Notes under the pieces: model-generated
What the model was told of the DNA's origin: nothing
Seen by the model: only the letters and a program-made list of their open reading frames with translations
Databases searched by the model: none
Made by a program: the position numbers and the translations under genes
Virus record (IMG/VR): IMGVR_UViG_3300029922_000001
Location: 62,001 to 126,000 of that record
Reading direction: 5' to 3' (one strand)
DNA: 64,000 nt
Part shown: piece after piece, positions 4,449 through 53,943 of the stretch
Layout: each line of letters opens with the position of its first letter
Numbering within the stretch: position 1 is the stretch's first letter

Positions 4449-5210
4449 ATGGGGTTAATCCAAACATTAAGATTGGCAAGCGTCTTAGATGGCATAGGCG
4501 ATGACGGCGATTATGAAAAAGCTGACGCCTTAGATCGTCATGTTCTTGCACAAATAGGTTATATTAACCAAAACCCATCAATTAACTGGTTTTTAAGACC
4601 TTGGAGCGATCACGCGCAAGAATTTAAAGATTCAGATTCTAAGCGTCAAAAATTCCATCAATCTACTATCCCAACTTATGGTAGTGGTTATACTCAAGCT
4701 CCTGAAGATTTTTCAGTTCAACCTAAAAAAGTACAAAATGTAAATGTTAGTGAATCTGCAAAACAAATTTTACAAACCATATCTGCACGTCCATGTTTTC
4801 TAAATATCAGCCTTAGAGGTTGTGGCGCTCAAGGAAGTGCTGTATTTGATGTTAAGATTACCAATAAACCACAAGGCGATAGGCAATTCCCTGTCTCCAC
4901 TGATATGTTTGTGGATTTTATGCCTGATACTGAAGGACACGAAAACGGTATATTAGATTGGAATGGTAAGAATTTTGTTTTTCAATCTCCAAACAAATGT
5001 AAACCACAAACCCAAAATACAAAAGAAGTGAGCGACACTTCTACTACTTTATTTAACATGGACGGTGGTAGCGGTGTTAACGGTCCAGCTTATGTAGTTA
5101 ATGACTACAAGAGTATTGGTATGAACGGTGGTAAAACTGGACCATTCGAATGGAATAGTCAACATCGCACTGAAGGCGTCGGAAGTTGGAAAAACGCCAT
5201 GCCAACATAA
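4449..5210 (+). CDS. Hypothetical protein with N-terminal helical tag
   Basis: 253 aa; RLASVLDGIGDDGDYEKADALD followed by HVLAQ. Confidence 0.75.
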   Translation: MGLIQTLRLASVLDGIGDDGDYEKADALDRHVLAQIGYINQNPSINWFLRPWSDHAQEFKDSDSKRQKFHQSTIPTYGSGYTQAPEDFSVQPKKVQNVNVSESAKQILQTISARPCFLNISLRGCGAQGSAVFDVKITNKPQGDRQFPVSTDMFVDFMPDTEGHENGILDWNGKNFVFQSPNKCKPQTQNTKEVSDTSTTLFNMDGGSGVNGPAYVVNDYKSIGMNGGKTGPFEWNSQHRTEGVGSWKNAMPT

Positions 5211-5255
5211 AGGAATTTGGAAATCGTTTAATAATATAAATATATAGGAGATAAT

Positions 5256-5972
5256 ATGCCCCGATCACCAATTAGACTTGTAAGCCAACAATATGATCTT
5301 GATATTTTCAATGGATCTTTCGAAAACGATGAAGTAGATGGTTTATCCGATTTACAACGCACTTTATTATCTAATGCATCTGTAACTAGAGAAGCATCCA
5401 AAAAGAAAGAACACTTTACTTCTTTATTGGAAATAATCGCTAAATCAGAAGATACCGTAGTAACTGCTGCATCCAAGATTGCTTACAATGATGACACTAA
5501 AATTTATCGTGTTCCAACTGAAATCAATGACGTAGAATTAATTGGCTTAAAAACTCATGGTTTAGTTCAGGGACAAGGTAGATTAGTTAAACTTACTGAA
5601 AGTGGTACTAATTTATTAAGAGATAAGTGGCTTACTTCCGAAAATAATATCAAACAAAAGAGAACCAAACCTAAATTTGATATTTTGAAAGAGCCAAAAT
5701 ATTCATATAGTGCAGCTAACGCCAATTATGTTGATAACTCTGCGTTTAAGGCTGTTGCTAGTTTGAATGATGAACAGAAAGTTGTGTTAGCTGAAAGTAT
5801 CTTAACAGATATTAAAGAAGGATATAATGATGAATTCATTAATGAAAGTCATGCTTATTTACGTCATTTAATCGGTTTAGAAGAAAATTGTCCTAATATT
5901 AACATCGCTACACGAACATTAGTTGCAAATCGTCTTGCATCTTCTGTACAAAGCAATAGACGCAATGGTTAA
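5256..5972 (+). CDS. Hypothetical protein with a possible winged-helix-like segment
   Basis: AGGAG SD; central LKTHGLVQGQGRLVKLTESG resembles a wHTH wing; several [RK]xA motifs. Confidence 0.7.
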   Translation: MPRSPIRLVSQQYDLDIFNGSFENDEVDGLSDLQRTLLSNASVTREASKKKEHFTSLLEIIAKSEDTVVTAASKIAYNDDTKIYRVPTEINDVELIGLKTHGLVQGQGRLVKLTESGTNLLRDKWLTSENNIKQKRTKPKFDILKEPKYSYSAANANYVDNSAFKAVASLNDEQKVVLAESILTDIKEGYNDEFINESHAYLRHLIGLEENCPNINIATRTLVANRLASSVQSNRRNG

Positions 5973-6687
5973 AGTTAAGTTAAACAGCACAGAGTTAATA
6001 GATATTTGCGGAGAATTAGTTCGCAAAACTGGAGTAAAGAAAGACAAATCTTTATTTAAATTACCTCCTAATTTCACTAGTGACAAAATCACTAGTGAAA
6101 AAAACTTAATAGCTTTGTTTCGTGTTTTATCCGAATATGAAGACGGCAGACATTTGAAGTTAATTAATTTGCCACAACTATATAATAAGTATGGCGGTTT
6201 ACCAATTTTAGAAGATAGTCAATATCGTACTGTACATAATTGGTTACAACAAGCACATTTTGCGTTTAGAGCAATTTTAGTCGAAAAAGCCATGCGACAA
6301 TTTGATAACCTTAATGATGCTGCTAAATGGGTTTATGAGCAAATGTATTTTAATAAACCTAGAAAATCATTTATTGCTAAAGACGGTAATGTTTACAAAC
6401 CACTTCGATATGCAACCTCTGAAGTTATTTTAAAATGGATTCAACAGGAATGTGAACAAAATCAACTAAATAAAGAATATGGTGCAAAAATCACAGTTGT
6501 AGAGTGGGAACTATACGGTTTACACGGAAAACTAAGAACTGCACAAAAAAATCTAACTCAAGAAATAAATTCAGTAGTAAAAATTGCAAAAACTTTAGAT
6601 TATAAAGGTTTTGCTCCCAATGCTGACGAACTAGATGATAAGTTAAATTCTTTTCTTGAGAATTTAGAAATAATGGATGGTGTTTAA
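5965..6687 (+). CDS. Hypothetical protein with C-terminal helical tag
   Basis: Start reassigned to ATG 5965, which overlaps the previous stop; ends LRTAQK...KIAKTLDYKGFAPNADELD. Confidence 0.7.
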   Translation: MVKVKLNSTELIDICGELVRKTGVKKDKSLFKLPPNFTSDKITSEKNLIALFRVLSEYEDGRHLKLINLPQLYNKYGGLPILEDSQYRTVHNWLQQAHFAFRAILVEKAMRQFDNLNDAAKWVYEQMYFNKPRKSFIAKDGNVYKPLRYATSEVILKWIQQECEQNQLNKEYGAKITVVEWELYGLHGKLRTAQKNLTQEINSVVKIAKTLDYKGFAPNADELDDKLNSFLENLEIMDGV

Positions 6688-9004
6688 AAGCATGAAGATT
6701 AAGATAGCCAAAAATGACAATTATAGTTATAGTTTTGAATATACTAAAGAAGAAAAAAAACGTCTTAGCGATTGGGCTATTTATGTAGAAGCTTTTGCAA
6801 CCACAGAAAGTGATAATTTAAGAACATCTTCTAGTATGATGTTGCAGATTAGAAACGCTGCTTTAATTAAAGACGTTTCCGGTCTTCCATCTGCTTTGGA
6901 AAATCTTTTTAGTCGTATTGAATCCTGGCGCAATCAAATTAGAAAAGTAGCTGATGCTAGACAAGATATTCCCCCTCAAGAAAAAGAAAGATTTGTTAAA
7001 ATCCAATTAGCTCTTAAAATTCAAGAAGTACTAACATCTAATTCAGAACTTAGAGATGCTTTGTTTACTCATATTTATGAATTATCAGATAAAATTGCAC
7101 ATAGCCCTAATTACTTACAAATTCCTCCTGGTTTTAGTGCTGAAGATGCTGTTGCCTATATGATTCGCAATACAATGGACTTAGATAAAACCGCTGCTTT
7201 ATCAGATAATGCTAATCGCGGTAAGATGTCTAGTTCTATTGTTGACTGGTTAGCTGGTTATGCTCCAGAAGCTAGTGGTGGCACTAAAAACTGGGAAAGT
7301 TATATTGCTCCTTTGTTAAGACAAAAGGGTAAAAATGCTGTTTCTGTTTGGAATAAAGGTAACAAGAGCGAAGAAGCATTAGAATATGAAGGTTCTGATG
7401 GTAAGACAACTGAAAATGCAAATATTTATCAAAATAGACAGCAAGATCCACATGCTTTAGTTGATGTTAAACCAGTTAATTTGTCTGCTTGGACAAAAGA
7501 AATGTTTAACAGCGTTAGAAACTTAGTTATGAAGTTGGCAAACAAGAATCCAGAAAAATACGAAGTTCTTGCGGAAAAATTTGGTACTTATACCGAAGCT
7601 ATGAACACAGTTGTAGCACAAGCTAAAAAAATAGATCAAATGCAAATTGGCTATTTCCAAGATAAAAACCCAGAAACTCTAAAGCAAATTCAAAATGCAG
7701 TACAAATTTTCCAAACTTCATTTATGAAGGCTCATGAAATTTTTCCAAATACCTCAAAGGGTTTTGCGGATGAATTAGCAGACATTTTAGAAGATTTCAT
7801 TCCTCAAGCACCAGTTGCTGAAGAAGTTGTTAATCCACAAACTGGTGAAACCGAAGTTGCACCACAGGTTGGAGAGACTGAAGAAAAAACAGATGATTTA
7901 GCTTGGATTGAACAACATGCTCCTGATTTAGCTCGTAAATTATTGAGTATTGGTGGTAAACCAGGTATGTATGTAGAAAATGGTTCTACCAAACCATATT
8001 CTAAGATGCTTGGTCAACAAGGTCCAGAAGGTCAACCTGTAATGAAATATTACATTGGCTTATCTAAACTATTACATTTAGGTATTAATTCTATTGGAGA
8101 TTTAAGTGACTTGTTAGATGAAACACGTTCATTGTCTTCTCAAAATTACGAAGCTATTATCTCTCATTTGATTACACAAGCTGGTTTTTACGAAAGTAGA
8201 TATCGTGCAGTTATGTTGTCTAAACTTTCTTCACCATCTCAGTATAAACCAATTTTCGGTAAATTCTTATTTGATTTGATTGCTCAATTTGGCGATAAGT
8301 ATTATGCTTATGCCGTTAAAGCTGCGGAAGAAAGTGGCGAATTGGCTCAAAATCCTCAAGCAACACAAGCTATTCAAGCTGCCAAGGATACTCTTATTAC
8401 TAATTTGCGTTCAGCCGCAAAAGCAAGACTTGGTGGAAAGAAAGAATTAGATGATTCTCAAGTTGAAAATATGACTCAAGCTAATGACGTATTCAGAGGT
8501 TTATTGTCAAGTATTGATCCTTCAATGAGAGCCGCTGCTTACGAATTCTTTAAGGACGAAATTGCAAAACGTCGTCAAGAGAAACTAGAATGGGGTGGTA
8601 ACTTCGGTGGTACAGCATTAACTCAAGAGGATCTTGAAGAAATCGCAAATGAAGTTTTCCAGAAAGTTTATTTGAATGGTAAAGTTGATATGTCACTTAG
8701 AAGTAAGGGCAAGAATCCTTATGAACCAGCTAAAGGATTAAGCTTCTTACAGCCACACGTTATTAAACAAGAACTTCAAAAGCTTAACACACCTGGTACT
8801 AAAGGTGATAGTTGGATGATGGGCATGGACGATTTGACTAAAGAAACAAGAAAAACTCCAGAAGCCACAGTGCGTGTTAAACTAAAAAGATGCGCTTCTA
8901 AAGAAGAACTTAATGATTTAGCTGCATATTACGATACTATTTCAAATTATGAATTTGCTGACAAGGTAGATAGATTAATTTTCAAATGGTATGCCAATGA
9001 CTAA
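6677..9004 (+). CDS. Large helical hypothetical protein, candidate internal/ejection protein
   Basis: 775 aa Ala/Gln/Leu-rich; C-terminal KRCAS then DLAAYYDTISNYEFADKVD tag. Confidence 0.8.
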   Translation: MVFKSMKIKIAKNDNYSYSFEYTKEEKKRLSDWAIYVEAFATTESDNLRTSSSMMLQIRNAALIKDVSGLPSALENLFSRIESWRNQIRKVADARQDIPPQEKERFVKIQLALKIQEVLTSNSELRDALFTHIYELSDKIAHSPNYLQIPPGFSAEDAVAYMIRNTMDLDKTAALSDNANRGKMSSSIVDWLAGYAPEASGGTKNWESYIAPLLRQKGKNAVSVWNKGNKSEEALEYEGSDGKTTENANIYQNRQQDPHALVDVKPVNLSAWTKEMFNSVRNLVMKLANKNPEKYEVLAEKFGTYTEAMNTVVAQAKKIDQMQIGYFQDKNPETLKQIQNAVQIFQTSFMKAHEIFPNTSKGFADELADILEDFIPQAPVAEEVVNPQTGETEVAPQVGETEEKTDDLAWIEQHAPDLARKLLSIGGKPGMYVENGSTKPYSKMLGQQGPEGQPVMKYYIGLSKLLHLGINSIGDLSDLLDETRSLSSQNYEAIISHLITQAGFYESRYRAVMLSKLSSPSQYKPIFGKFLFDLIAQFGDKYYAYAVKAAEESGELAQNPQATQAIQAAKDTLITNLRSAAKARLGGKKELDDSQVENMTQANDVFRGLLSSIDPSMRAAAYEFFKDEIAKRRQEKLEWGGNFGGTALTQEDLEEIANEVFQKVYLNGKVDMSLRSKGKNPYEPAKGLSFLQPHVIKQELQKLNTPGTKGDSWMMGMDDLTKETRKTPEATVRVKLKRCASKEELNDLAAYYDTISNYEFADKVDRLIFKWYAND

Positions 9005-14029: not shown

Positions 14030-14383
14030 ATGAACAGGAAATTAGTATTACAGAAATTATGCATAGCGGCAAATGAATTAGATGGTCATCAATTCAAAAA
14101 AGAAGTTGATGCTATTACTGTTATTATGAGAAGGGTAGCAGGTATGTATGATGATATTAGTCATGAAGAAAACTGGCATCAAGTTGACCAAAGTCATAAA
14201 GAACCTTTTGACGGCGAAGAAGAAAATGAATTAGATATGCAAAATAATCTCCCTGATGAACGTTCACAATGTGAATTACTAATAAAATGGCTGAAGCTTA
14301 AAGGAATAGAAATTACTAATAAACACATAGCTTATGATAAAGAATTTCTAAGTAAACTTTATCAATCAGTATATTCCTTATAA
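14030..14383 (+). CDS. Hypothetical protein with N-terminal helical tag
   Basis: IAANELDGHQFKKEVDAIT then RRVAG. Confidence 0.7.
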   Translation: MNRKLVLQKLCIAANELDGHQFKKEVDAITVIMRRVAGMYDDISHEENWHQVDQSHKEPFDGEEENELDMQNNLPDERSQCELLIKWLKLKGIEITNKHIAYDKEFLSKLYQSVYSL

Positions 14384-14850: not shown

Positions 14851-17475
14851 ATGAGTGAAAAAAATATTCCATTAAGGCAAGTTCTGTCCGAGACTGCACA
14901 AAATGTGACAAGAAATGGTAACAAGCAAAAAGTATCTGTTAATGAAGCAATCATTAACAATGCAATGGACGTTATGGTTCCATTTCCTCGTCCTCATGCA
15001 ACTTCCTTTGAAGGTCGTGGTGCTTCTAGAGATCAAGGTTTAACAAGAACAGCCAATAGAATGAATCGTATTGCTTTTGGTGGAATGGGCGGCGGTGGTA
15101 TGGGTGGCGGTATGGGTGGAACTATTTCCACTCCACCACAATTTTATAGACCACAGTTAACCTCTATTGCTTTTAACACTGTTACACAAAGAAAAGAAGT
15201 ATATAACCAAGTTGATTGGTGGTTAAGAAATGAACCTATTATTGCTGCTGCTATTTTATTCTATTCTAGATTTCCCTTTTCTGGTTGGAAATTAGAAGGT
15301 TGCACCAGTTATGTAAAAGAATATTTCGAAAAGTTAATTGCTAAACTAGAGTTTGCTAAATGGCTACCATTAATTGCACAAGAATACTATGCAATGGGAG
15401 ACTGTTTTGTACAAGCTGAAATTAATTGTCCACTTTGTCATGGAAGTATGCAAGATGAATCAGGACAACCATGTAAGCATGAAGGTGCTGTTTGGAAAAA
15501 TCTTTACGTACATGATCCATCTTCTATCGAAGTAAGTAATGCTTATCCTGGTATGCCACCACAATACTACTTAACACCAACAGAAGAAATGAAAAGAGTT
15601 GTTATGGAAAAGCATCCTCGTGAACATTATGAGGCAATTCCAAATAAACTCAAGATGACTATTGCACAAGGTAATCCTATTCCTTTAGATCCTAGTTGTC
15701 TTACACACTTTAAACATTTTGGTAATGCTTATGCACCTTTTGGCAACTCTTTAATTAAGCCACTATTTCCATTGCTTATGTATAAAGATAGATTGCGCCA
15801 AGCACAATGGTTAATTGCAGAGAGGCACATTCTACCCATCAAAATCGTTAAGTTGGGTTCTGATAAGCGTTATGCTGGTGAAGCCGATCTACAGGCAGTA
15901 CAAGAGGAATTAGCAGCAGTTGCTAACGATCCATTCTTGACCTTAGTCGTACCTCATGACTTTGATTTTGAATTTTACGGTGCAACAGGTAAAGTACTTC
16001 AAATTACAGAAGAATTTGGACTTATTGAAAAAGAAATGATCAATGGTTTGATGCTTAACCAAGCTATTCTTAGTGGTGAAGGTCCTTCATACGCTAATGC
16101 TTCTATCGGTTTACTTGTTATGGCAAGACGTTTAGAAGAATTTAGAAATATAGTTGCAGAATGGATTCAAGAAAAATTATTCAAACCTGTTGCTATGTGG
16201 AACGGTTTCGAAGAAGAAGATGATACAGGTACTACTAAATATATTTATCCTAAGATTAAGTTTGATGACTTACAACTTAAAGATAACACTGGAACACTAC
16301 AGATTGTTATGCAATGTGTTGCTCAAGGATTCTTACCAGTACAAACTATTGTTGAAATGTTAGACTTAGATTGGGATACTCAAGTTGAAAGATTACGCTT
16401 TGAACAATCTATCAATATTATGCAAACCCCATCTGTTACTGGTACTGATATGGGAACAGGATTTAGAGGTCCAATGGGTGCGGATATGTCAGGTGGAATG
16501 GCTCAACAAGCTGGATTACCACCATTACCAATGGGTGGAATGGGTGCTGGTGCATCTGGAAATCCTGGTGGTGCTGGTGGCGGTGGTGCTTTGCCAGGTC
16601 AAGGAAACATCCCAGCAGTAGCTACAATACATTCACCTTGGGCTAGAGTTGCACAAGAAGTTCCTGAAGCTTACAGAATCGCACAAGATTTAACACGTCA
16701 CATTTATAACGAATACAATTTCTCTCAAGTTGATCAAACTAGTAGAGATAAAGGTAGTTATTCTTTGGTTAGAACCGCAGAAGAAAGTATTGGTATGTAC
16801 CGTAAAGCACATGCTATTACTAAAGAAGTATTTATGGAAGCATTAGATAATCCTAGATACAAGCGTAAGGCATCTAGAATCAAGAGTGCGGCTCATGCTA
16901 AGTTCTTAGAAACAGTTCGCCCTATTACTGGTAGAGGTTTCGATAAGCAACTATTACCTGAAAATGAAGTTTACTTTGTTGATTTTGGTAATTTTGTAGG
17001 AACTGGCGTACCAATGAACCGTCTCGCTATTAGAGATTACTTCTTTGATGATTCAGTACAAGAAATTGATGGCGTCAGAGTTGTAACTGCTCAAAGAAAG
17101 CCACAAGTTAATTTGCCTAAAGAGTACTTTACCAGTATCGAACAAGCACTTTACAATATCGTACTTGAAGCTGGTATTCCTTATGCATTTTATGCACAAT
17201 TTGCGGCTGGACCTGATGGTAAATACAAGATTGATGGTGCTTTCCCAGCAATTAAATTAGGGTTTGAAGCTGACTCAGAATCTTTCCACTCTCATGATGA
17301 TCAAATTGCTAGAGATAGACAAAGGGATCAAGAGTTAATGTCTCAAGGTTGGACAATTATGAGATTTACAGATCACGACATTAAACAAAAAGATAAAGAG
17401 GTACTTCGTGTTATCCAAGAAGTTGCATCAAAAATCATGGGACAATCCAGTAACTCCAATACTATCCAACTTTAA
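14851..17475 (+). CDS. Portal protein with C-terminal DUF559-like endonuclease domain
   Basis: Portal-like segments NEPIIAAAILFYSRFP, YAPFGNSLIKPLF..L..KDRLRQAQ, PIKIVKLG, IINGL-like region; position between terL and protease. C-terminus YKIDGAFPAIKLGFEADSESFH..RDRQRDQELMSQGWTIMRF is DUF559-like. Confidence 0.82.
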   Translation: MSEKNIPLRQVLSETAQNVTRNGNKQKVSVNEAIINNAMDVMVPFPRPHATSFEGRGASRDQGLTRTANRMNRIAFGGMGGGGMGGGMGGTISTPPQFYRPQLTSIAFNTVTQRKEVYNQVDWWLRNEPIIAAAILFYSRFPFSGWKLEGCTSYVKEYFEKLIAKLEFAKWLPLIAQEYYAMGDCFVQAEINCPLCHGSMQDESGQPCKHEGAVWKNLYVHDPSSIEVSNAYPGMPPQYYLTPTEEMKRVVMEKHPREHYEAIPNKLKMTIAQGNPIPLDPSCLTHFKHFGNAYAPFGNSLIKPLFPLLMYKDRLRQAQWLIAERHILPIKIVKLGSDKRYAGEADLQAVQEELAAVANDPFLTLVVPHDFDFEFYGATGKVLQITEEFGLIEKEMINGLMLNQAILSGEGPSYANASIGLLVMARRLEEFRNIVAEWIQEKLFKPVAMWNGFEEEDDTGTTKYIYPKIKFDDLQLKDNTGTLQIVMQCVAQGFLPVQTIVEMLDLDWDTQVERLRFEQSINIMQTPSVTGTDMGTGFRGPMGADMSGGMAQQAGLPPLPMGGMGAGASGNPGGAGGGGALPGQGNIPAVATIHSPWARVAQEVPEAYRIAQDLTRHIYNEYNFSQVDQTSRDKGSYSLVRTAEESIGMYRKAHAITKEVFMEALDNPRYKRKASRIKSAAHAKFLETVRPITGRGFDKQLLPENEVYFVDFGNFVGTGVPMNRLAIRDYFFDDSVQEIDGVRVVTAQRKPQVNLPKEYFTSIEQALYNIVLEAGIPYAFYAQFAAGPDGKYKIDGAFPAIKLGFEADSESFHSHDDQIARDRQRDQELMSQGWTIMRFTDHDIKQKDKEVLRVIQEVASKIMGQSSNSNTIQL

Positions 17476-17497
17476 TAAGTTGGATAGATTGCCTGGA

Positions 17498-18165: not shown

Positions 18166-18232
18166 AGGTGAAATATATGTGGTTTTTCAAAAAATCATTT
18201 CTGAGCATCGTTTAAGGGAGCCAAAAGAAAAC

Positions 18233-21200
18233 ATGATACGCAAAGGAATATCAGGCGGTGTAATAGGTTTAAACAATTTAATTTGTTTGAACAAAAAAGA
18301 AGCAAACGCAATTAAGGCTAGAATCTTAACGGCATCTAGTTTGCGTGAAAGTGCCCGTATCGGTTTGCAACGTTTGTATGCAGACCCCGAAGATGCACTA
18401 AAGAAATATAAAGGAACCGAATTTGACATCGCCAACGAAATGCTTGAACGTCGTGGCATGAAATTACTATGGGTTAGATGTAGAGCTATTGACGCTAACG
18501 TAGTAAATGCTAATGGTGATTACTTCTCTACTAAAGAGTTATTGAAAGAAACCATACACAATGGCAAAAAAGTTCCAGCCTATAAAACATTTGAAGGCGT
18601 ACCAATTTATACCAATCATGAAAATGATGACATTGAAAAAGCAAAAGGTACTGTAGTTTATGCAGAGTGGGACGAAAAGGAAGAAGCGGTTTATTGTGTA
18701 TTTTACATAGACGAAGAAGCTTATCCCGAAATTGCTCATGCTATTCGTGGTGGAATTATGCACGACGTTAGTATGGGTTGTTTTATTCCAGGTACTAGAG
18801 TATTAACTAATTCAGGATATAAGAATATTGAAAATGTAAATATAAACGATTTACTTTTAGATAAAGATGGTAATTTTACCACTATAGTTAATAGACAAAT
18901 TAAAATTAAAAACGAAGATATTTTTGACATTAAATTTAATGGCGGCTTAACCATTAGTGCAACAAAAGAACATCCTCATTTTGTATTTAAAAAAGATGTA
19001 TGGAAATCTAGAAAAACTAGAAATAAACCAGGCAAAGGAAAAGAACGATGGTCTTATAAAGATATTGGAGAGCCAATTGAAATTACTTCTGAAAACTTAG
19101 AAGTTGGTGACGTGCTAGTAACACCTATTAATCAGGTTGAATTAAATCCTGATAATATAACTCCTGATTTCGCTAGATTATTAGGTTATTTTTTGGCTGA
19201 AGGAAATTTTCTTAAATACAATGATTCTATTAAAGAATTAGAGCTTACTTTTGGTCTTCACGAAAAATATACATTAGTTCAAGAATTTATTACACTTTTT
19301 TCAAAAGAATTTCCAAATTCTACAATTAGAGTATATGATCGTATACCTAACAATAATTGTGTTATTAGAGTATATGACACTGAAATAGCTAATTTATTTT
19401 ACAAATATTGCGGAGAATATTCTGATAGTAAAAAACTAGATTCATCATTAATGTTCCTTCCTAAAAATATTCAATTAGAATTAATCAAAGGGTATTTTAA
19501 TGGTGACGGTTGTATTCATCGTGCTAAAGATCGTGTTATTGGATTAAGCGCATCTTCTTGTTCTTTGGATTTAGTAGAACAAATCTCAATGATATTATTT
19601 AGAAATGGAATTTATCACAAGAAAAATGGAAGAATTAATGGGAAATATATTGAATATACCAAATCTAAAGAAGCATGGAAGCAGAAAGGTGATTTTAGGA
19701 AAACATATTATGAAATTTCTATTCCTCAAGCTTATTGTCCTCAATTGTTAAATGAAACTAGATTTGATTTTCAACCCAACTTACGACAAGATAATTTTCA
19801 TTATGGTAATTGGATAATTCATCCAATTAAAAACATAATCAAAAGACACTATGAAGGATTAGTATATAATTTTGAAACAGAAAGCCATACATATATGGTT
19901 GAGAATTTTGCTACTCATAATTGCGCGGTTCAATCTGGTAATTGTTCAATTTGTGGCAAAGAAGCAGTTAAGGAAGATGATTACTGTAGTCACATGAAGA
20001 ATTACAAGGGTAAGAAATTCCCTGGAACTGGCGAAATTGCTTACGAAAAGAATAAAGATATTAAGTTTATTGAAATCTCTATTGTTGCAGATGGTGCTTT
20101 TGATTCTTGTATGATTAAAGAAATTTACGAACAAGAAGAAATTGAAAATGCTGCTTCACAATTAAGACATAAGACTGCAAGTGTACAAGCAAACATTCTA
20201 TTAGCTGAAAACAATCTTCCAGAAGACATGCTTGAAAGAAGAAAGAGTGAAGAATTCTTACGTGCTATCAATAATTGTAATATTGAAATCTTTAGATTCG
20301 CTGAAAAATTAGGACACACAACTAGAATAGCTCAAGAAGCTGGAACATTAGTTGGTGGACAAATGGGTGGTGGACAAATAGGACAAAACGCTACAGTTAA
20401 TACACTAATGCAATTACTAGGTATTGATCCTACTACTGGATTAAATATCTTAGACATGTTGAACTTAGCTCTTAACTTCTTAGAAGTTGCAGTTATGGAA
20501 TTACTTTCTAAGAGTAGTTCAGTTAAGCTTGAGTACGTTAACAAGGTGACTAAAGCTATGACAGATTTACAAGATGTTATGGAAGACGTTATTAATGACG
20601 GTGTTGATGTTGCACAACAACCACAAGGTGTTCAATTACAAGGTGGTCCAGTTTCACAACAGCAACCAGTACCAGGACAGCAACCACAAGGACAACAACA
20701 ACAAACTCAAGTACCAGGTCAAGGACAACCAGGACAGGTACAACAGCAAGCAAATGTTATGCCAATGGCTTATCAACCAGCAGTTGGTCAGGTAACAGGT
20801 CCTATGTTTGGCGCTTTACCTGGTGTTACAGCTACATCAAGTAATAGAAAATTAGTATGGGCATCACATGATGACGATGATGTTCGTGAGGTTTTTGCCT
20901 CTAGCAATAGAGGTACCAGTGTAAAGAAAGTTAAATCTTTCGATGAAGCTTTAACTCACATTGGAGAAGTAGTTATCAAACTAGCAAGTGCAGTTGGTGT
21001 TGCTGACGATTCATCACTAAAAGCACTCAATTTTAAAATTAAAAAGAATCAAGAACAAAGCAAATCGACTCAACCCGGAGGAAACAATATGGAAAACAAC
21101 ATCTTCAACGAAATGGCGCAAAGACATCGTTTGCGCAACGCATCCAAACTCTCTATTGATGCAGTGTTTACAGACCACTCAAATAGATATAGTGTAGCCA

Positions 21201-23788
21201 TCTCAACAGATGGAACTGTCAAAGCGTCTGTAGACAACAAGCGTGTTGCTTGGGATTGTAGATTGAACGATACTCAAATCGAACGTCTTCAAAACAATGA
21301 CATTGCTCCTGTAGGTAACGAAATTCTAGATACATTTGTTGGTTTTGTTAAAACCGCAGAAACAGAAGGACGTAAAATTCTTGCATACGAAAAGCCAAAA
21401 ACTGTTACTAACATTTTCGAAGTTAGCTTAGAAGGTGAAAGAACTGGTACTGATGATGATGTTAGAGAAAACACTATCAAACCATTAAGAACCGGTGTTG
21501 AAGACGAAACTCAAGAAGTTAAACTTGAAAAGTATCGTACAGGCGTTAAAGAAGATGTTAGAGAAAATCTACTAGCAGATGAAGCTGGTTTATATGCACG
21601 TCGTAACGAAGAACGTGATATTGCAGAAGTTCTTTTGGAAGATGCTCGTGTTGGAGTTAATGAAGAAGTATTAGAAAATAAGCTTAATCATCACCGTGCC
21701 CAAGAAAGCAGTGTTGAAACACATGAAGCTGTTGCTAAAGTTCTAAGTGGTTTTGGTAATGCTGTACTAGCATCTAAGAATACTCCAGATGAAGTAGTTA
21801 CTGCCGCTATTGAATTAGCTAAGAAAGACAACTTCAATGAATTATTGGTAGTTGCTGCTGCTGGAACACAAACTAGAACAAAAGTTGCTTCTAGATATGC
21901 TTTCCACAACAAACCACTTCCTACACTATCTGCTTCTGCCGCTGTTCTTAATGAATTAGGTAAGGTAATCGTTAGTGGAGTTTCTGCTGTTGATGTTGCT
22001 CAAATTGTTAGAGAAGCAAGTGCAAATAAAGATCATGCTGTTAAAGCAGCATATATTGATGCTAAAGGTAAAATGGGAGAAGACTTCTCATTCGACGCTT
22101 ATTATTCTCAAAGAGAAGCAAGTAAAACAGACGCTATTCGTGTCGCGTTAGCTAGTTTATCAGGCGATGCAAATGATAACATTTCAGGTGTTGAACAAGT
22201 TAAAACAGCTTTGGCTGCTATGGCAAAAACAACTGTTGCTATCAAAGTTACACCAAAGGAAATTCTTACAGTATTAGCTAGTGTTGATGCTAAGCAATTA
22301 TCCAAGGACTTAACAGTTGCAAGAGATGCTAAAGAAGTTAAAGCAAGAAATGATTTACGTGAAAGAGTTGCCTTCTTTGAAGGTGCAAACATCCGTATCG
22401 CTAGTGAAGTAGACATCTACAATACTATCGTAGGTTACTTAGCTGACTATGCCAACAAAGATAAGTTCAATACATCTTCTATCGTAGAAGCTATTGGTAG
22501 AGTTGTAGACAAACCTCGTTATGCTGAGAAATATGTTTCTCGTTTAGCTTTCTCAAGTATTAGAGAAGCTGAAGCTACTATTACAGAAGACACAAACATC
22601 ACTCGTCGTCTTCAATGTACATTGGGTGAATTAGGATTAGACGCTAAAGATGAAAACTTTGACGACATGTTAAAGCAAAAAGTTGCTGAACTATTCGTTC
22701 AAAGAGGATATCCTATTGATCCAAACAACTTTAATCTAACTGATGTTATGATTACTGCTGAAGGTGCATGTACAGCAACTATTAGTACACGTTCAACAAA
22801 GACATTCAAAGTTGATCCTAGTGAATCTGGTGAAGATGAAAATGTAATCTCAGTAGATGGCGCTCCTACTCCTTTTGAACCAGAAGCACAACCTACAGAG
22901 GGTGAAGGCGTTCCTCTTGTTCCTACAGATATGTCTCTACCTCCGACAGATCCAAACGAACAACCAACTATCATGACTGCTGGTGCAATTGCTCTTAGAA
23001 AAGCTAAGAGAGAAAATCTATTAAGATTAGCTCAAATGCCAGGTGGCGGTGGTGGTGGAATGCCAGGTGCTGGCGGTGGAATGCCAGGTGGTGCTGGTGC
23101 TGCTGGTGCTGCTGGCGCACCTGATTTATCTGGTGCTGGTGACGGTCCTGGTGTTGGTGCATTAACCAATCCTCCTGATGGTGGATTAGATGATATGGGT
23201 GGAAGTGATCAAGCTACTGAAAACAAGGATTCTATGCCTACTCCTGGTAAGCAACTTCCTTGGGGTTCAATCTGTCCTGCCTGTGGTTCTGCTAGTGTTT
23301 CATTAGTAGACGGTAAAGGTAGCTGTGCTGATTGTAAAGCTGAAATCACATATGAATTCAAAGCAACAGTTATTCCTGGTAGCAAGAAGAATGAAGAAGC
23401 TCCTACAGATGAAATGTCTATGGACATTCCAGGCTTAGGAACCTTGCCAGGTGCTGAAGCTGGTGCAAATGGTGCAACCCCTCCTGCTGGTGGCGCACCA
23501 GGAATGGGCGGTGCTGCTCCTGCTGGTGGACAAGCTCTACTACAAGCACAAGCTTCTTGGTTAGCTGATAGTCGTACTTTTGTTAGAACAGCACAAGCTG
23601 ACTTTAACAAAGCTACAGAACAAGTTCTACCTCCTGGTTTCATCTGTCCTGGTTGTGCAAACAGAGAAGTTAATAAACTTGGATCTCAAACATTCTGTTA
23701 CGCTTGTAAGACAATAAGTAAGAGTCAAATTATAGCTTCCAGAATCCCTGGAAAGGTTATAGCTAGAGTCACTTGGGTTCTTAAATAA
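18233..23788 (+). CDS. Prohead (maturation) serine protease fused to a long scaffold-like region; intein-containing
   Basis: NANGDYF, IYTNH (putative catalytic His), DVSMG (putative catalytic Ser), CSICG..CSH, FIEISIVADGA fit HK97-type prohead proteases; AAGGGAG SD favours start 18233 over GTG 18179. Confidence 0.85.
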   Translation: MIRKGISGGVIGLNNLICLNKKEANAIKARILTASSLRESARIGLQRLYADPEDALKKYKGTEFDIANEMLERRGMKLLWVRCRAIDANVVNANGDYFSTKELLKETIHNGKKVPAYKTFEGVPIYTNHENDDIEKAKGTVVYAEWDEKEEAVYCVFYIDEEAYPEIAHAIRGGIMHDVSMGCFIPGTRVLTNSGYKNIENVNINDLLLDKDGNFTTIVNRQIKIKNEDIFDIKFNGGLTISATKEHPHFVFKKDVWKSRKTRNKPGKGKERWSYKDIGEPIEITSENLEVGDVLVTPINQVELNPDNITPDFARLLGYFLAEGNFLKYNDSIKELELTFGLHEKYTLVQEFITLFSKEFPNSTIRVYDRIPNNNCVIRVYDTEIANLFYKYCGEYSDSKKLDSSLMFLPKNIQLELIKGYFNGDGCIHRAKDRVIGLSASSCSLDLVEQISMILFRNGIYHKKNGRINGKYIEYTKSKEAWKQKGDFRKTYYEISIPQAYCPQLLNETRFDFQPNLRQDNFHYGNWIIHPIKNIIKRHYEGLVYNFETESHTYMVENFATHNCAVQSGNCSICGKEAVKEDDYCSHMKNYKGKKFPGTGEIAYEKNKDIKFIEISIVADGAFDSCMIKEIYEQEEIENAASQLRHKTASVQANILLAENNLPEDMLERRKSEEFLRAINNCNIEIFRFAEKLGHTTRIAQEAGTLVGGQMGGGQIGQNATVNTLMQLLGIDPTTGLNILDMLNLALNFLEVAVMELLSKSSSVKLEYVNKVTKAMTDLQDVMEDVINDGVDVAQQPQGVQLQGGPVSQQQPVPGQQPQGQQQQTQVPGQGQPGQVQQQANVMPMAYQPAVGQVTGPMFGALPGVTATSSNRKLVWASHDDDDVREVFASSNRGTSVKKVKSFDEALTHIGEVVIKLASAVGVADDSSLKALNFKIKKNQEQSKSTQPGGNNMENNIFNEMAQRHRLRNASKLSIDAVFTDHSNRYSVAISTDGTVKASVDNKRVAWDCRLNDTQIERLQNNDIAPVGNEILDTFVGFVKTAETEGRKILAYEKPKTVTNIFEVSLEGERTGTDDDVRENTIKPLRTGVEDETQEVKLEKYRTGVKEDVRENLLADEAGLYARRNEERDIAEVLLEDARVGVNEEVLENKLNHHRAQESSVETHEAVAKVLSGFGNAVLASKNTPDEVVTAAIELAKKDNFNELLVVAAAGTQTRTKVASRYAFHNKPLPTLSASAAVLNELGKVIVSGVSAVDVAQIVREASANKDHAVKAAYIDAKGKMGEDFSFDAYYSQREASKTDAIRVALASLSGDANDNISGVEQVKTALAAMAKTTVAIKVTPKEILTVLASVDAKQLSKDLTVARDAKEVKARNDLRERVAFFEGANIRIASEVDIYNTIVGYLADYANKDKFNTSSIVEAIGRVVDKPRYAEKYVSRLAFSSIREAEATITEDTNITRRLQCTLGELGLDAKDENFDDMLKQKVAELFVQRGYPIDPNNFNLTDVMITAEGACTATISTRSTKTFKVDPSESGEDENVISVDGAPTPFEPEAQPTEGEGVPLVPTDMSLPPTDPNEQPTIMTAGAIALRKAKRENLLRLAQMPGGGGGGMPGAGGGMPGGAGAAGAAGAPDLSGAGDGPGVGALTNPPDGGLDDMGGSDQATENKDSMPTPGKQLPWGSICPACGSASVSLVDGKGSCADCKAEITYEFKATVIPGSKKNEEAPTDEMSMDIPGLGTLPGAEAGANGATPPAGGAPGMGGAAPAGGQALLQAQASWLADSRTFVRTAQADFNKATEQVLPPGFICPGCANREVNKLGSQTFCYACKTISKSQIIASRIPGKVIARVTWVLK
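18779..19921 (+). mobile_element. Intein with LAGLIDADG homing endonuclease (381 aa)
   Basis: N-terminal CFIPGTRVLT, block B SATKEHP, LAGLIDADG motifs LLGYFLAEG and IKGYFNGDG, C-terminal VYNFETESHTY...THN followed by +1 Cys; visibly more AT-rich than its flanks. Confidence 0.95.
21440..21698 (+). repeat. About five degenerate ~16-aa repeats (R-T/V-G-x-[DE]..E..L) in the protease extension
   Basis: RTGTDDDVRENTIKPL / RTGVEDETQEVKLEKY / RTGVKEDVRENLL / RRNEERDIAEVLLEDA / RVGVNEEVLENKLNHH. Confidence 0.7.
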
Positions 23789-26464: not shown

Positions 26465-27334
26465 ATGTCATCAATGATTAGAAATAATAAAGCATATAAT
26501 GAACAAAGAGAAGCCATCATTGCAATGGCAGTGGAAACACCTGATGGTCGTTCCGCTCTTGCTGGAGCTATGGTAGACCCTATCAAGAACGCTCTTAACT
26601 ACCAAGGCGTTATCCGTAAATTAATTATGGTAGACGAACTACCTCAAGGTGCTTACCCTCGCTACGAAAGAGATATTACAGTCAAAAGCTGGATCATCGG
26701 TAATCGTGCTGGTGTACCTGTTAGCGTTATCGAAGGCGAAGACTTATTTATCCCTACAGTCGAATTAGCAGCATTGCCTACAATTCGTCTCCAAGAGGTG
26801 AAAAGCAGGAGATATTACATAGTAGATCGTGCCCAAGTTAAGGCTAAGGACTCTCTACAACGTCAAGAAGATACTCTAGGATTTGAAGTTATCAACGCTG
26901 CTGTTCCAACAGAACAGTCAATTACAGTAGTTGGACAATTGCAACCTGAGAACCTTAACCACGCTTTAACACTTATTGAAGAACATGAATTGGTCGGAGC
27001 AAAGATAGTCCTTCCTCCTTCACGTTACAAAGATATTAGAGGCTTTGGTAAGGAATTCTTTGATGAAGCAACTCAAAGAGATATCTTAATGACAGGACTT
27101 TATGGACACATTTACTCTGCGGACATCCACGTAAGTACTATGGTTCCTAAGAACTGTGTGTATATCATGGCTCCTGCCCAATTCGTTGGTGCAATGCCTA
27201 TTCGTCAAGACGTTACAGTTATCCCTGCTGACGATCCTCGCAAGCTTCGCTTGGGTTGGGTAGTCTACGAAGATATCGGTATTGGCGTCATCAACGACTA
27301 TTCTTTGGCTCGTATTCAAGTAACTGTTTCCTAA
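26465..27334 (+). CDS. Major capsid protein (HK97 fold)
   Basis: AGGAG SD, strong terminator downstream; ALAGAMVDPIKNALNYQGVIRKL, VDELPQG, VDRAQ..A...QRQED, GLYGHIYSADI, GWVVYE pattern of large-phage capsids. Confidence 0.85.
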   Translation: MSSMIRNNKAYNEQREAIIAMAVETPDGRSALAGAMVDPIKNALNYQGVIRKLIMVDELPQGAYPRYERDITVKSWIIGNRAGVPVSVIEGEDLFIPTVELAALPTIRLQEVKSRRYYIVDRAQVKAKDSLQRQEDTLGFEVINAAVPTEQSITVVGQLQPENLNHALTLIEEHELVGAKIVLPPSRYKDIRGFGKEFFDEATQRDILMTGLYGHIYSADIHVSTMVPKNCVYIMAPAQFVGAMPIRQDVTVIPADDPRKLRLGWVVYEDIGIGVINDYSLARIQVTVS

Positions 27335-46279: not shown

Positions 46280-46690
46280 TTAGTTCTTTCTGGATTCTTC
46301 TTTAACGCCCCATTGCATACTCACTGGTTTAACATCAAGTTTTCCTTCAATGTCTCCAATGTAATTCATCATGTCATTTTTAGTAACATCTGGTGCGGCT
46401 TCAAGAACGATGGTGAGCGTATGATGAACTAATGGAGCGTGTTGAGCTTCACTAGCAAATTGCTTAACAGCTAATGGGTTACCAGCAGGAGCAGCACCAG
46501 GAACTTGTGGTTGACCTGGCTGTTGACCAGCAAGCATAGGGTTAGTTGCGCCTGATTCAATAGAAGGATCAAACATAGCACCTTCTAGTTGTTGTGCAAA
46601 TCTAGTTAATTCATCGGCTAATGCTACCTCTTTTCTATTAACTCTCAAATTTTCTGCGATTCTTATTAGTTGATAACCAATGCTGCTCAT
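46280..46690 (-). CDS. Hypothetical protein with N-terminal helical tag
   Basis: RIAENLRVNRKEVALADELT then RFAQQ; Gln/Pro/Gly/Ala linker. Confidence 0.7.
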   Translation of the reverse strand: MSSIGYQLIRIAENLRVNRKEVALADELTRFAQQLEGAMFDPSIESGATNPMLAGQQPGQPQVPGAAPAGNPLAVKQFASEAQHAPLVHHTLTIVLEAAPDVTKNDMMNYIGDIEGKLDVKPVSMQWGVKEESRKN

Positions 46691-52681: not shown

Positions 52682-53360
52682 TAATAACTCCATCTGTATC
52701 AAAACAAACATTTGTTCCAGAGACTTTCACACTTTGATTTTTGCATAAATACAATAACATTTGATTAACATTAGAATTCACCGAACCACTTTTCATTTCG
52801 GACATCAAATAATCATTAAGCTTCCGATCCCAACCAATTGCAGCAGGAACGTAAAAGTCTTTTGCTCTAACGTAAAAAGACGGTATCGAATAGAATTCAC
52901 TAGTGTTGCTATTATAGTCATTCCATAAATATTGATAATCTTCTGGATTTTTGATAGCACTCAAACTAGAATTTGCCCAAGTGTTAGCAAAACCCAATGG
53001 TATAGAACCCCAAGTTTGATGATAAGGAATGATAAAAGGACAATTTACAATATTTGGAATCACAATAAATTCGGAATCAATCACTGCTAACGAATCGCCT
53101 TCAACCGTATCTTTGATTGAATAAAACCTCTTATGAGTACTTGTTAAAGATAGTAAAAATGGCGTATATGCATCAAACTTGTCAACAGTATGAATATTTA
53201 AATTTGGATAATCTAACTTCAATTGTTGCAAATAGACATATAGATAAATATTGTTTTTATCCACAATTGCCGTCACTTCTTTTATGTCGCTACTTAAAAA
53301 TAAATAGTTCAATATGTTTTTTGTTTTTTCTTTTTGAGTAGAAAATACGTAGACGTGCAT
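52674..53360 (-). CDS. Hypothetical, possibly GT-A-like protein
   Basis: Beta-alpha N-terminus and AVIDSEF; inside the glycosyltransferase cluster. TATAAT 6 nt before ATG 53360. Confidence 0.45.
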   Translation of the reverse strand: MHVYVFSTQKEKTKNILNYLFLSSDIKEVTAIVDKNNIYLYVYLQQLKLDYPNLNIHTVDKFDAYTPFLLSLTSTHKRFYSIKDTVEGDSLAVIDSEFIVIPNIVNCPFIIPYHQTWGSIPLGFANTWANSSLSAIKNPEDYQYLWNDYNSNTSEFYSIPSFYVRAKDFYVPAAIGWDRKLNDYLMSEMKSGSVNSNVNQMLLYLCKNQSVKVSGTNVCFDTDGVING

Positions 53361-53376
53361 AATATCATTATACATT

Positions 53377-53943
53377 TTAGCTTTCTGGATTTATCAAAAG
53401 ACTATTTGTATTTGGATCAATTGCAGCTTGAGTTTTGCCTATATTGCCTGTAATCGTATTACTGTCAGTGGATGCCCCACCATAACATGTAATTTCTTTA
53501 ATACCAGTCCAGCCTTTTTCATTTTTATACTGTTCCCATTGTGTTTGATTAACTTGTCGTCCTGGTTCCACAGTATATATTTTTTCGCCGTTCTCATTGC
53601 TACTGGAATGAACAAATAAATTACGTTGACCATCTTTGGATGTAATAATGAAAGGTGGACTATCTGGACCTACTTTGCTTTGGAATTTTTCAATTTCACC
53701 TGGATCTAAGGCGAAACTAGTGATTTGATTACTTTCTAATTTACCACCACTATATGGCTTGATTGGATTCCCGTTTGCATCTGTTAAACTAGAACCTCCC
53801 GTTGGAGCAGTGACAACATTGTAATTCATTTGAGATAATTTGATGTATTGTGCGAATAAATCAGTAATTTGATCTGCCTCCAAATCATAACCCTTTGCAT
53901 CTATTCTGTTAGCAAATTTTAAAAACTGTTCTGCGTATTTCAT
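53377..53943 (-). CDS. Hypothetical protein with N-terminal helical tag
   Basis: Start reassigned to MKYAEQF (GGAG SD); KFANRIDAKGYDLEADQIT then IKLSQ. Confidence 0.7.
   Translation of the reverse strand: MKYAEQFLKFANRIDAKGYDLEADQITDLFAQYIKLSQMNYNVVTAPTGGSSLTDANGNPIKPYSGGKLESNQITSFALDPGEIEKFQSKVGPDSPPFIITSKDGQRNLFVHSSSNENGEKIYTVEPGRQVNQTQWEQYKNEKGWTGIKEITCYGGASTDSNTITGNIGKTQAAIDPNTNSLLINPES

What the first reader, a model, noticed from the sequence alone, without database searches (positions are those of the whole stretch)
4470..53943. A shared ~20-aa helical tag on eight unrelated proteins: candidate capsid-targeting signal
Seen: the pattern A-x2-[LIY]-[DE]-x(7-10)-A-D-x-[LVI] occurs at a terminus of eight otherwise dissimilar ORFs on both strands: 4470-4538 RLASVLDGIGDDGDYEKADALD; 6579-6636 KIAKTLDYKGFAPNADELD; 8915-8971 DLAAYYDTISNYEFADKVD; ~14060-14119 IAANELDGHQFKKEVDAIT; ~28815-28762 EISEALEAQQRFAEADEL; ~29050-29106 QVANKLDDMLDVNRADALT; ~46663-46604 RIAENLRVNRKEVALADELT; ~53919-53863 KFANRIDAKGYDLEADQIT. 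N-terminal copies are followed within about 5-20 aa by an AQ/SQ/AG junction (HVLAQ, RRVAG, MVVSQ, RQAQ, RFAQ, KLSQ). Established: T4 internal proteins carry a short capsid-targeting sequence that the prohead protease removes. Inference: a portable docking module that addresses diverse cargo to the procapsid and is then clipped off, i.e. a distributed phage protein-packaging system.
Basis: partly seen in the sequence, partly recalled or inferred. Interest (0 to 1): 0.82.

Follow-up and report, generated by a model that had tools for sequence, protein, structure and literature searches.

The report
Shared terminal hairpin tag, huge phage
Eight otherwise unrelated proteins of a 441-kb phage carry the same ~33-residue helix-turn-helix module at one end; the module recurs at protein ends across a clade of huge phages and usually sits beside a likely protease site, so it is probably a detachable docking handle for virion assembly, though packaging into the capsid has not been tested.

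Summary
They belong to a real sequence family. A profile seeded from them finds 32 distinct copies in 1.36 million six-frame residues of related phages and none in reversed decoys. Every copy lies at a protein end. The module is a 30-35 residue helix-turn-helix hairpin (AF2 pLDDT 90) with a TPR-like signature, consensus L..IA..LD..G...EAD.L. It is joined to unrelated ORFan bodies, usually through low-complexity linkers.

The window is the virion-structural region of a 441-kb uncultured phage whose closest cultured capsid relative is Bacillus phage G. A head-maturation protease domain starts the 1869-residue protein between the portal and capsid genes. A motif [KR]-h-A-Q is eight-fold enriched in head-module proteins. 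It is conserved at two positions in the protease-bearing protein and adjoins six of the eight tags on the body side.

The best reading is a portable docking handle that brings varied proteins to a shared partner during head assembly and is probably then cut off. Encapsidation, cleavage and the partner are all inferred. The module is not a T4-type capsid targeting sequence by any feature tested. Interest is moderately high.

The parts
4455..4553 (+). N-terminal tag of ORF 4449-5210 (aa 3-35), ending in RHVLAQ
   Evidence: The tag is conserved in orthologues L011 and L013, although AQ becomes AY there.
6562..6669 (+). C-terminal tag of ORF 5965-6687 (aa 200-235). RTAQ lies at 6535-6546, just upstream of the tag.
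   Evidence: Orthologue tags in L011 and L013 are conserved. AF2 places helix A at the end of a long helix, followed by a turn at aa 215-219 and helix B at aa 220-239.
8903..9001 (+). C-terminal tag of ORF 6677-9004 (aa 743-775). RCAS lies at 8888-8899, just upstream of the tag.
   Evidence: The tag is 77% identical in P0003, against 42% for the rest of the protein. It is retained in the 28%-identical P0004.
14042..14143 (+). N-terminal tag of ORF 14030-14383 (aa 5-38), ending in RRVAG
   Evidence: The whole gene is absent from relative L013.
28744..28833 (-). N-terminal tag of ORF 28462-28839 (aa 3-32), ending in VVSQ
   Evidence: There is one substitution (A to S) in the 96%-identical relatives.
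29023..29133 (+). N-terminal tag of ORF 28996-29751 (aa 10-46). RQAQ lies at 29155-29166.
   Evidence: The first 70 residues have no substitutions against relatives L009 and L010. The orthologue L014:12427-13101 keeps both the tag and a following AQ.
46592..46681 (-). N-terminal tag of ORF 46280-46690 (aa 4-33), ending in TRFAQ and followed by a P/Q/G-rich linker
53830..53937 (-). N-terminal tag of ORF 53377-53943 (aa 3-38; corrected start), containing LFAQ and ending in KLSQ
18179..23788 (+). 1869-aa protein between the portal and capsid genes. Its N-terminal head-maturation protease domain is interrupted by a LAGLIDADG intein. Conserved [KR]-h-A-Q sites lie at 20324-20335 and 23024-23035. 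It is the candidate enzyme for cutting off the tags and a candidate hub.
   Evidence: phrog_18299 hit, E 1.7e-18. Intein domains. Conserved sites in five relatives and in L058.
26465..27334 (+). Major capsid protein. It has no delta domain, so a separate scaffold is expected.
   Evidence: phrog_2522 hit, E 1.6e-65. More than 668 homologues at 65% identity or higher. It is 46% identical to Bacillus phage G gp27.
14851..17475 (+). Portal protein (Mu-like) with a C-terminal DUF559 nuclease-like domain. It contains RVAQ...RIAQ at 16645-16686.
2139..2159 (+). Short N-terminal leader MSKRIAQ. Similar leaders occur at 11668-11688, 12608-12625, 14394-14420, 10796-10822 and 5256-5288. All end in the same junction motif as the tags.
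   Evidence: Six ORFs have the motif in their first nine residues, against 1.8 expected (p 0.003), and all six lie in the head module. Four of the six are conserved in L013. The N-terminal position bias holds across the clade.

Best explanation
The eight segments are copies of one portable module of about 30-35 residues. It is a helix-turn-helix hairpin with a TPR-like sequence signature (hh..L..IA..LD..G...EAD.L..hh). It is fused, usually through a low-complexity linker, to the extreme N- or C-terminus of otherwise unrelated and mostly ORFan proteins.

The module is a lineage-wide device in a clade of huge phages that share a phage-G-like capsid protein, a portal fused to a nuclease-like domain, and a giant protein that starts with a prohead protease domain.

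The most likely role is a common docking handle. It would bring a variable set of proteins to one shared partner while the head is assembled. Candidate partners are the long non-protease part of the giant protein, the capsid shell interior, or the portal.

In most copies a [KR]-h-[AS]-[QGS] site lies on the body side of the tag. The prohead protease would then cut the handle off, as T4 removes its capsid targeting sequences.

Shown: the module, its terminal placement, its modularity, its conservation, the protease gene, and the enrichment and placement of the junction motif.

Inferred: a shared partner, encapsidation, and cleavage.
For: The module is real and terminal.
- 36 hits, 0 in decoys, and all 32 distinct copies lie at protein ends.
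- Hairpin fold: AF2 gives H2-17, a turn, H21-39, with pLDDT 90.5.
- The profile matches designed helical-repeat and TPR proteins.

Modularity.
- None of the eight bodies has a shared Pfam or PHROG family.
- The same tag subtype occurs on different bodies (L015:16872-17504 compared with ORF 4449).
- A tagged gene is present or absent between relatives (14030).
- Linkers next to tags are visible in the sequence.

Selection.
- Tags are as conserved as, or more conserved than, the bodies (77% against 42%; 37% against 24%).
- There are no substitutions in the first 70 residues (tag and flanks) of ORF 28996 against close relatives, while the remaining ~180 residues have ten.

Head context.
- Four window tags lie between the terminase and portal genes and two lie next to the capsid gene.
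- In a distant subclade, a 570-860-aa protein encoded between the portal and the giant protein carries a strongly conserved C-terminal tag behind a P/E/K-rich linker, in seven loci.

Protease and site.
- phrog_18299 head maturation protease, E 1.7e-18.
- [KR][ILVFYMT]AQ occurs 9 times against 1.09 expected in head-module ORFs; 0 of 3000 shuffles reach that, and permuted control motifs give 0-2.
- Two such sites are conserved in the giant protein, one directly after the protease domain.
- Six of eight tags have [KR]x[AS][QGS] within 22 residues on the body side, against 0.53 expected. For the two C-terminal tags the site lies upstream of the tag, as a removable handle requires.
- Small, very basic bodies behind some tags (L051 87-aa protein; ORF 28462) recall T4 internal proteins (PMC9026906).
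Against: - There are no proteomic, structural or genetic data for any member.
- No partner was identified, and no window protein has a TPR-like array.
- The junction is not conserved in all orthologues: VLAQ becomes VLAY in two lineages, and RTAQ becomes RTKI in L013.
- Several N-terminal tags in relatives lack the junction.
- Enrichment of the strict site motif is weaker in L013/L014 (4 observed, 1.09 expected, P 0.027) and absent in the distant subclade.
- The A of AQ falls about where a TPR helix B has its conserved small residue. Part of the junction signal may therefore be structural rather than a cleavage site (my own comparison with the TPR consensus).
- Two window tags sit in what looks like the tail and host-recognition part of the module.
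- Relatives were sampled only +/-10 kb around capsid genes, so enrichment near structural genes is untested.
- The ADP-ribosyltransferase hit, which would have paralleled T4 Alt, is not supported by the refined profile (E 0.0035, then 9.9).
Confidence: 0.45

Rival explanations
1. The hairpin is a permanent protein-protein interaction or oligomerisation module. It could stack with other copies, or cap a helical partner, in some complex that is not inside the capsid, for example a tail, baseplate or cytoplasmic assembly. The neighbouring A-Q is then simply the end of helix B.
For: - The signature is that of a single TPR-like hairpin, and such units normally pack against other helices.
- Two tagged genes lie in what looks like the tail and host-recognition part of the module.
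- The junction is lost in some orthologues.
- In L016 the tagged gene sits among non-structural genes.
Against: - [KR]-h-A-Q is enriched in head proteins even where no tag is present. It occurs at extreme N-termini and at conserved sites of the protease-bearing protein.
- For both C-terminal tags in the window the site lies upstream of the tag rather than within helix B.
- A C-terminally tagged protein belongs to the portal-protease-capsid gene block in a whole subclade.
Confidence: 0.3
2. The hairpin is an intramolecular structural cap or folding aid for each protein, spread by domain shuffling, with no common partner.
For: - In the AF2 model of ORF 5965, helix A of the tag continues a long helix of the body.
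- No partner was found.
Against: - Most tags are separated from the body by low-complexity or clearly disordered linkers.
- The bodies are unrelated in length and composition, yet the same surface-exposed acidic positions (D after L, A-D) are kept.
- Strict terminal placement in 32 of 32 copies.
Confidence: 0.12
3. The similarity is a chance or compositional resemblance between amphipathic helices, picked out after the fact.
For: - Within the window alone the leave-one-out E-values are only 0.045-1.1, and single-seed searches fail.
Against: - The profile finds new terminal copies in independent genomes and none in reversed decoys.
- The tags are conserved in orthologues.
- All copies are terminal.
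Confidence: 0.02

Closest known systems
T4 capsid targeting sequences (CTS) of internal proteins IPI-III and Alt, removed by the prohead protease gp21
   Same: A short terminal peptide is shared by divergent cargo proteins. It addresses them to the assembling head core and is cleaved at the protease motif that ends it. Alt is processed at both termini, and the cargo set varies between related phages (PMC9026906). In this window the tag occurs at either terminus, a candidate protease motif lies on the body side, a prohead protease gene is present, and tagged genes come and go between relatives.
   Different: The T4 CTS is 10-19 residues and N-terminal, and it ends in L/I-x-E. The tag here is a folded hairpin of 30-35 residues, and the adjacent motif is [KR]-h-A-[QSG]. 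The protease here matched phrog_18299 and no Pfam protease family; whether it is related to gp21 was not tested. Targeting is unproven. No sequence relationship was tested or is claimed.
C-terminal helix-turn-helix coat-binding domain of the P22 scaffolding protein (gp8), also used to load foreign cargo into P22 capsids
   Same: A terminal helix-turn-helix of about 35 residues is enough to bind the inside of an HK97-fold shell, and it is portable to unrelated cargo (my own knowledge). The 570-860-aa protein of the distant subclade carries its tag at the very C-terminus, with a basic second helix (HKIIRKY).
   Different: The profile search of PDB sequences returned no scaffolding protein. The window tags are acidic rather than basic. 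Most copies are N-terminal.
Encapsulin cargo-loading peptides
   Same: Short terminal tags on diverse cargo direct them into an HK97-fold shell (my own knowledge).
   Different: Those peptides are about 10-20 residues long, extended rather than hairpins, and not removed. The shell here is a tailed-phage capsid.
Tetratricopeptide (TPR) and Sel1-like helical repeats
   Same: The unit is a helix-turn-helix of about 34 residues with small residues at the packing positions and a G-x-[YF]-x-x-A turn. The best PDB profile hits are a designed helical-repeat protein (E 4e-7) and the TPR protein RapH (E 0.05).
   Different: There is one unit per protein, at a terminus, rather than a tandem array. No member reaches a Pfam TPR threshold; the best E is 0.046.
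Herpesvirus assemblin-scaffold polyprotein, and phage protease-scaffold fusions such as P2 gpO
   Same: An N-terminal protease domain is followed by a long region, with a conserved small-residue site just after the protease and another near the C-terminus. This recalls the assemblin release and maturation sites at A|S (my own knowledge).
   Different: The protein here is 1350-2400 residues long. A scaffold role for the remainder is not shown, and the scissile bonds are unknown.

Membership tests
T4-type capsid targeting sequence | N-terminal propeptide of 10-19 residues (PMC9026906) | tested here: not met
   The tag spans 30-35 residues. Two of eight window copies, and 14 of 32 copies across the clade, are C-terminal.
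T4-type capsid targeting sequence | Ends at the gp21 cleavage motif L/I-x-E | tested here: not met
   The adjacent motif is [KR]-h-[AS]-[QGS]; no L/I-x-E is found consistently at the junction.
T4-type capsid targeting sequence | Sufficient to carry a foreign protein into the head, and removed in the mature virion | not testable with these tools
   This needs fusion-protein packaging experiments and virion mass spectrometry.
TPR repeat | Match to the TPR sequence profile at family threshold | tested here: inconclusive
   The PDB profile search hits a designed helical repeat at E 4e-7 and RapH TPR at 0.05. In Pfam, only 2-3 of 30 members hit TPR_6 or TPR_10, at E 0.046-0.094, below the family thresholds. 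None of the eight full proteins hits TPR.
TPR repeat | Tandem array of three or more units | tested here: not met
   There is one copy per protein, and no second domain hit in any tagged protein.
P22-type scaffolding coat-binding helix-turn-helix | Terminal helix-turn-helix fold | tested here: met
   The AF2 model has two helices joined by a 3-residue turn, with pLDDT 90.5.
P22-type scaffolding coat-binding helix-turn-helix | Sequence relationship to known scaffolding proteins, and a basic coat-binding face | tested here: not met
   No scaffolding protein appears among the PDB profile hits up to E 10. The window tags are acidic.
Encapsulin cargo-loading peptide | Short extended terminal motif of about 10-20 residues | tested here: not met
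   The tag is a helical hairpin of 30-35 residues.
Prohead (head maturation) protease, for the N-terminal part of ORF 18179-23788 | Profile match to a phage head maturation protease family, and a gene position between portal and capsid | tested here: met
   phrog_18299, E 1.7e-18, two stretches around an intein. The position is shown. There is no Pfam or PDB sequence match, so catalytic residues were not assigned.

The most novel reading that the evidence does not exclude
A clade of huge phages uses a two-tier, genetically portable addressing code for head proteins. One tier is a folded TPR-like hairpin tag. The other is a 7-9-residue leader, M(N)WYKKAQ, with degenerate forms such as MSKRIAQ. 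Both end in the same [KR]-h-A-Q site, which is read by a prohead protease fused to a giant scaffold-like protein. Under this reading the phage loads a fast-changing repertoire of cargo proteins into its capsid and releases them by cleavage.
Probability: 0.22. Interest if true: 0.85.

Novelty: new variant of a known kind. Interest (0 to 1): 0.68.

Why it matters
Huge phages carry hundreds of ORFan genes, and it is largely unknown which of their products travel inside the particle. A recognisable terminal tag together with a recognisable cleavage motif would allow virion cargo, and possibly injected effectors, to be predicted from sequence alone across an uncultured clade with more than 600 capsid-gene relatives.

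It would also be a second natural example, mechanistically distinct from T4's, of a portable capsid-addressing signal. Such a signal could be tested directly as an encapsidation handle.

Even if the handle serves another assembly, a single orphan TPR-like hairpin used as a terminal adaptor on dozens of unrelated proteins is an unusual piece of protein architecture.

Tried and rejected
- Pfam and PHROG scans of the eight proteins gave no shared or informative family.
- Single-seed iterative searches inside the window did not recover the family.
- The search for related loci with single proteins (portal, ORF 28996, terminase) returned only the source contig. The one metagenome scan, with the ORF 5965 alignment, did the same.
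- The first four capsid relatives (L002-L005) showed no tags with the first, narrow profile.
- The ESM Atlas search with the tag gave nothing above noise.
- tblastn of a canonical tag against 50,697 phage records gave no match.
- The head region of Bacillus phage G (40 kb) has no tags.
- The tagged ADP-ribosyltransferase (ART-PolyVal) in L015 looked like a parallel to T4 Alt (E 0.0035). It drops to E 9.9 with the refined profile, so I do not count it.
- The large C-tagged protein of the distant subclade shows no homology to ORF 6677, the 598-aa ORF or any other window protein beyond the tag itself, and has no Pfam family.
- The AF2 model of ORF 5965 (pLDDT 69) has no significant fold match in the PDB.
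- The intein-free protease region has no Pfam or PDB sequence match.
- A literature search for the WYKKA leader found nothing relevant.
- Recent DNA duplication is rejected: the tags share 21% amino-acid and 43% nucleotide identity.
Full report
**Source and context.**
The window is bases ~62,001-126,000 of IMGVR_UViG_3300029922_000001 (also recorded as Ga0302280_1000004), a 441,498-bp viral contig. It holds a virion-structural region:
- large terminase, 162-1688;
- a Mu-like portal with a C-terminal DUF559 nuclease-like domain, 14851-17475;
- a Ser/Thr kinase, 17408-18124;
- an 1869-aa protein, 18179-23788;
- two ORFans of 598 and 226 aa;
- the major capsid protein, 26465-27334;
- a long minus-strand block with tail and host-recognition features. 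These are an RNA-ligase-like tail-fibre attachment protein and proteins with PA14 and NPCBM domains.

The capsid protein has more than 668 homologues at 65% identity or higher, on contigs up to about 480 kb. Its closest cultured relative is gp27 of the 497-kb Bacillus phage G, at 46% identity.

**The observation.**
All eight segments are present at the stated places. Two gene starts should be corrected, to 5965 and to 53943. That makes six tags N-terminal and two C-terminal.

Statistics confined to the window are only suggestive.
- The eight resemble each other more than shuffled or random segments do (mean Smith-Waterman score 25.9 against 17.6 +/- 0.8).
- Six of eight rank first in leave-one-out profile searches of all six frames. 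The E-values are 0.045-1.1, which a reader selecting the best matches could nearly produce by choice.
- Single-sequence iterative searches fail.

**Independent evidence that the module is real.**
(a) Orthologues.
- ORF 6677 has a 42%-identical relative (P0003) and a 28%-identical one (P0004).
- Their contigs (L011, L013) are syntenic and also carry orthologues of ORFs 4449 and 5965.
- All three tags are retained. The tag of ORF 6677 is 77% identical where the rest of the protein is 42%.
- The orthologue of ORF 28996 in L014 keeps its tag at 37% identity, against 24% for the rest.

(b) New members.
- A profile built from window tags plus orthologue tags finds N-terminal copies on unrelated proteins of L014, L015 and L016.
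- I then fetched 66 loci around capsid genes of the clade. In those, the profile gave 12 hits at E<=0.1 and none in reversed sequences.
- After four iterations over 1.36 million six-frame residues there are 36 hits (32 distinct) at E<0.01, and still none in the decoy.

(c) Position.
- All 32 distinct copies are terminal. Eighteen begin 0-17 residues after the initiator Met, and fourteen end 3-13 residues before the stop.

**What the module is.**
- The alignment (A3) has the consensus hh..L..IA..LD..G....AD.h...h, with an Ala and an Asp nearly invariant.
- AlphaFold2 on this alignment gives helix 2-17, a three-residue turn and helix 21-39, with pLDDT 90.5.
- A profile search of PDB sequences hits a designed helical-repeat protein (E 4e-7, several repeats) and the TPR protein RapH.
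- Pfam TPR models are touched only weakly.

It is therefore a single, orphan TPR-like hairpin. By the tandem-array criterion it is not a TPR domain.

The bodies attached to it share nothing. Tags are usually set off by low-complexity stretches. These are P/Q/G-rich in ORF 46280 and L016, acidic in ORF 28996, and P/E/K-rich before the C-terminal tags of the distant subclade. Paralogous tags share about 21% amino-acid identity and 43% nucleotide identity, so they are old rather than recent DNA repeats. A tagged gene (14030) is missing from L013.

**Head-assembly context.**
- Four window tags lie between the terminase and portal genes, and two flank the capsid gene.
- In the subclade with about 55% capsid identity, a 570-860-aa ORFan encoded between the portal and the giant protein carries a strongly conserved tag at its very C-terminus, in seven loci.
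- The giant protein begins with a head-maturation protease domain (phrog_18299, E 1.7e-18). In this genome a LAGLIDADG intein splits that domain. A 96%-identical relative lacks the intein.
- Phage G has a stand-alone protease and, in the 40 kb examined, no tags.

**The junction.**
Twelve of 18 N-terminal tags have it, against 3.6 expected; for AQ alone the figures are 8 against 2.2. It also turns out to be part of a wider signal.
- [KR][ILVFYMT]AQ occurs 9 times in the head-module ORFs 2139-25768, against 1.09 +/- 1.04 in shuffles (0 of 3000 shuffles reach 9). Elsewhere it occurs 4 times against 1.07. Permuted control motifs give 0-2.
- Two such sites are conserved in the giant protein of five relatives. 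One lies directly after the protease domain. The other lies about 250 residues from the C-terminus and is followed by a G/A/P/M-rich stretch. The second site persists in the distant subclade.
- Six head-module ORFs carry the motif within their first nine residues (MSKRIAQ, MAKKTAQ, MRKTAG, MWYKKALAQ and others; 6 against 1.8 expected). Across the clade, [KR]xAQ is about six-fold over-represented in residues 1-6.
- Six of the eight window tags have [KR]x[AS][QGS] within 22 residues on the body side, against 0.53 expected. For both C-terminal tags the site lies upstream of the tag.

This layout is what a maturation-protease site would produce, and it recalls the release and maturation sites of herpesvirus assemblin (my own knowledge).

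Caveats apply.
- The site is lost in some orthologues.
- It is weaker in L013/L014 and not enriched in the distant subclade.
- The Ala may partly reflect helix-B packing.

**Interpretation.**
The best-supported mechanism is a portable docking handle that recruits heterogeneous proteins to a shared partner during head assembly and is, in most cases, removed by the prohead protease. Functionally this matches T4's capsid targeting sequences (PMC9026906) and resembles the scaffolding helix-turn-helix of P22 and the encapsulin loading peptides. It fails the defining features of each family that I could test, so it is an analogue and not a member.

My confidence differs by claim:
- the module is real: about 0.97;
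- it is a handle for a shared partner: about 0.7;
- it acts in head assembly, with encapsidation: about 0.5;
- it is cleaved: about 0.4.

The main rival is a permanent interaction module with no link to the capsid interior.

**What did not help.**
Atlas, PDB, Pfam and fold searches of bodies and tags, the phage-record tblastn, phage G, and a marginal tagged ADP-ribosyltransferase were all uninformative. See Tried and rejected.

Noticed in passing
window 14394-14420 (+) and 45567-45587 (-); L062:11988-16101 (eight consecutive genes); L066, L065, L036, L040, L079, L081: There is a second N-terminal motif, M(N)WY[KR][KRQ]A, often followed by Q. Sixteen of 17 matches in 1.36 million six-frame residues come directly after a Met, against one match in reversed sequences. 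It heads unrelated proteins, for example a P-loop kinase-like ORF. It grades into the MSKRIAQ and MAKKTAQ leaders; the L079 ORF begins MWYRIKKAQFGGG where ORF 2139 begins MSKRIAQFGGIGG. It resembles the WY.KAA signature of Sel1-like repeats. No literature was found.
   Followed up: partly
window 20324-20335 and 23024-23035 (+); also 16645-16686, 13262-13273, 6535-6546: [KR]-h-A-Q is about eight-fold enriched in head-module proteins. It is conserved at two sites of the protease-bearing giant protein, making it a candidate cleavage motif of the prohead protease.
   Followed up: partly
window 18179-23788 (+), about aa 200-590: An intein with a LAGLIDADG homing-endonuclease domain interrupts the head-maturation protease domain. 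The 96%-identical relative L009 lacks it (1483 aa against 1869 aa).
   Followed up: partly
window 14851-17475 (+), aa 789-858: The portal protein carries a C-terminal DUF559/MTES_1575 restriction-endonuclease-like domain. The fusion is kept in L013, L015, L016 and the distant subclade.
   Followed up: no
window 17408-18124 (+): A Ser/Thr protein kinase gene lies directly after the portal gene and overlaps its end. It is conserved at this position in L009 and L013.
   Followed up: no
window 3332-4429 (+): A UDP-galactopyranose mutase-like flavoenzyme gene lies inside the head module. It is 64% identical in L011, and the L013 orthologue hits PF03275 GLF.
   Followed up: no
window 26465-27334 (+), aa 28-40: The capsid protein has the nearly invariant stretch G-R-x-A-L-A-Q-A-M-V-E-P (Q is G in this genome). 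It resembles the [KR]..A-Q junction, and whether it is a processing site is unknown.
   Followed up: no
window 47973-49859 and 49859-51205 (-); 30310-30969 and 51212-52711 (-): There are two apparent paralogue pairs in the minus-strand block. One is adjacent ORFs with similar NPCBM-type N-termini. The other is two ORFs sharing a Y-x-Y-[AV]-T-H-N-S stretch. Both were seen by eye in the translations.
   Followed up: no
window 14030-14383 (+) compared with L013:14198-15894: The tagged gene 14030 is absent between the orthologues of ORFs 12608 and 14394 in L013, so a tagged gene has been gained or lost.
   Followed up: partly
L015:12980-14191: An ART-PolyVal ADP-ribosyltransferase lies next to a ParB-like nuclease ORF downstream of the capsid gene of a 421-kb relative. 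It has a marginal tag-like segment near its C-terminus (E 0.0035 with the early profile, 9.9 with the refined one).
   Followed up: yes
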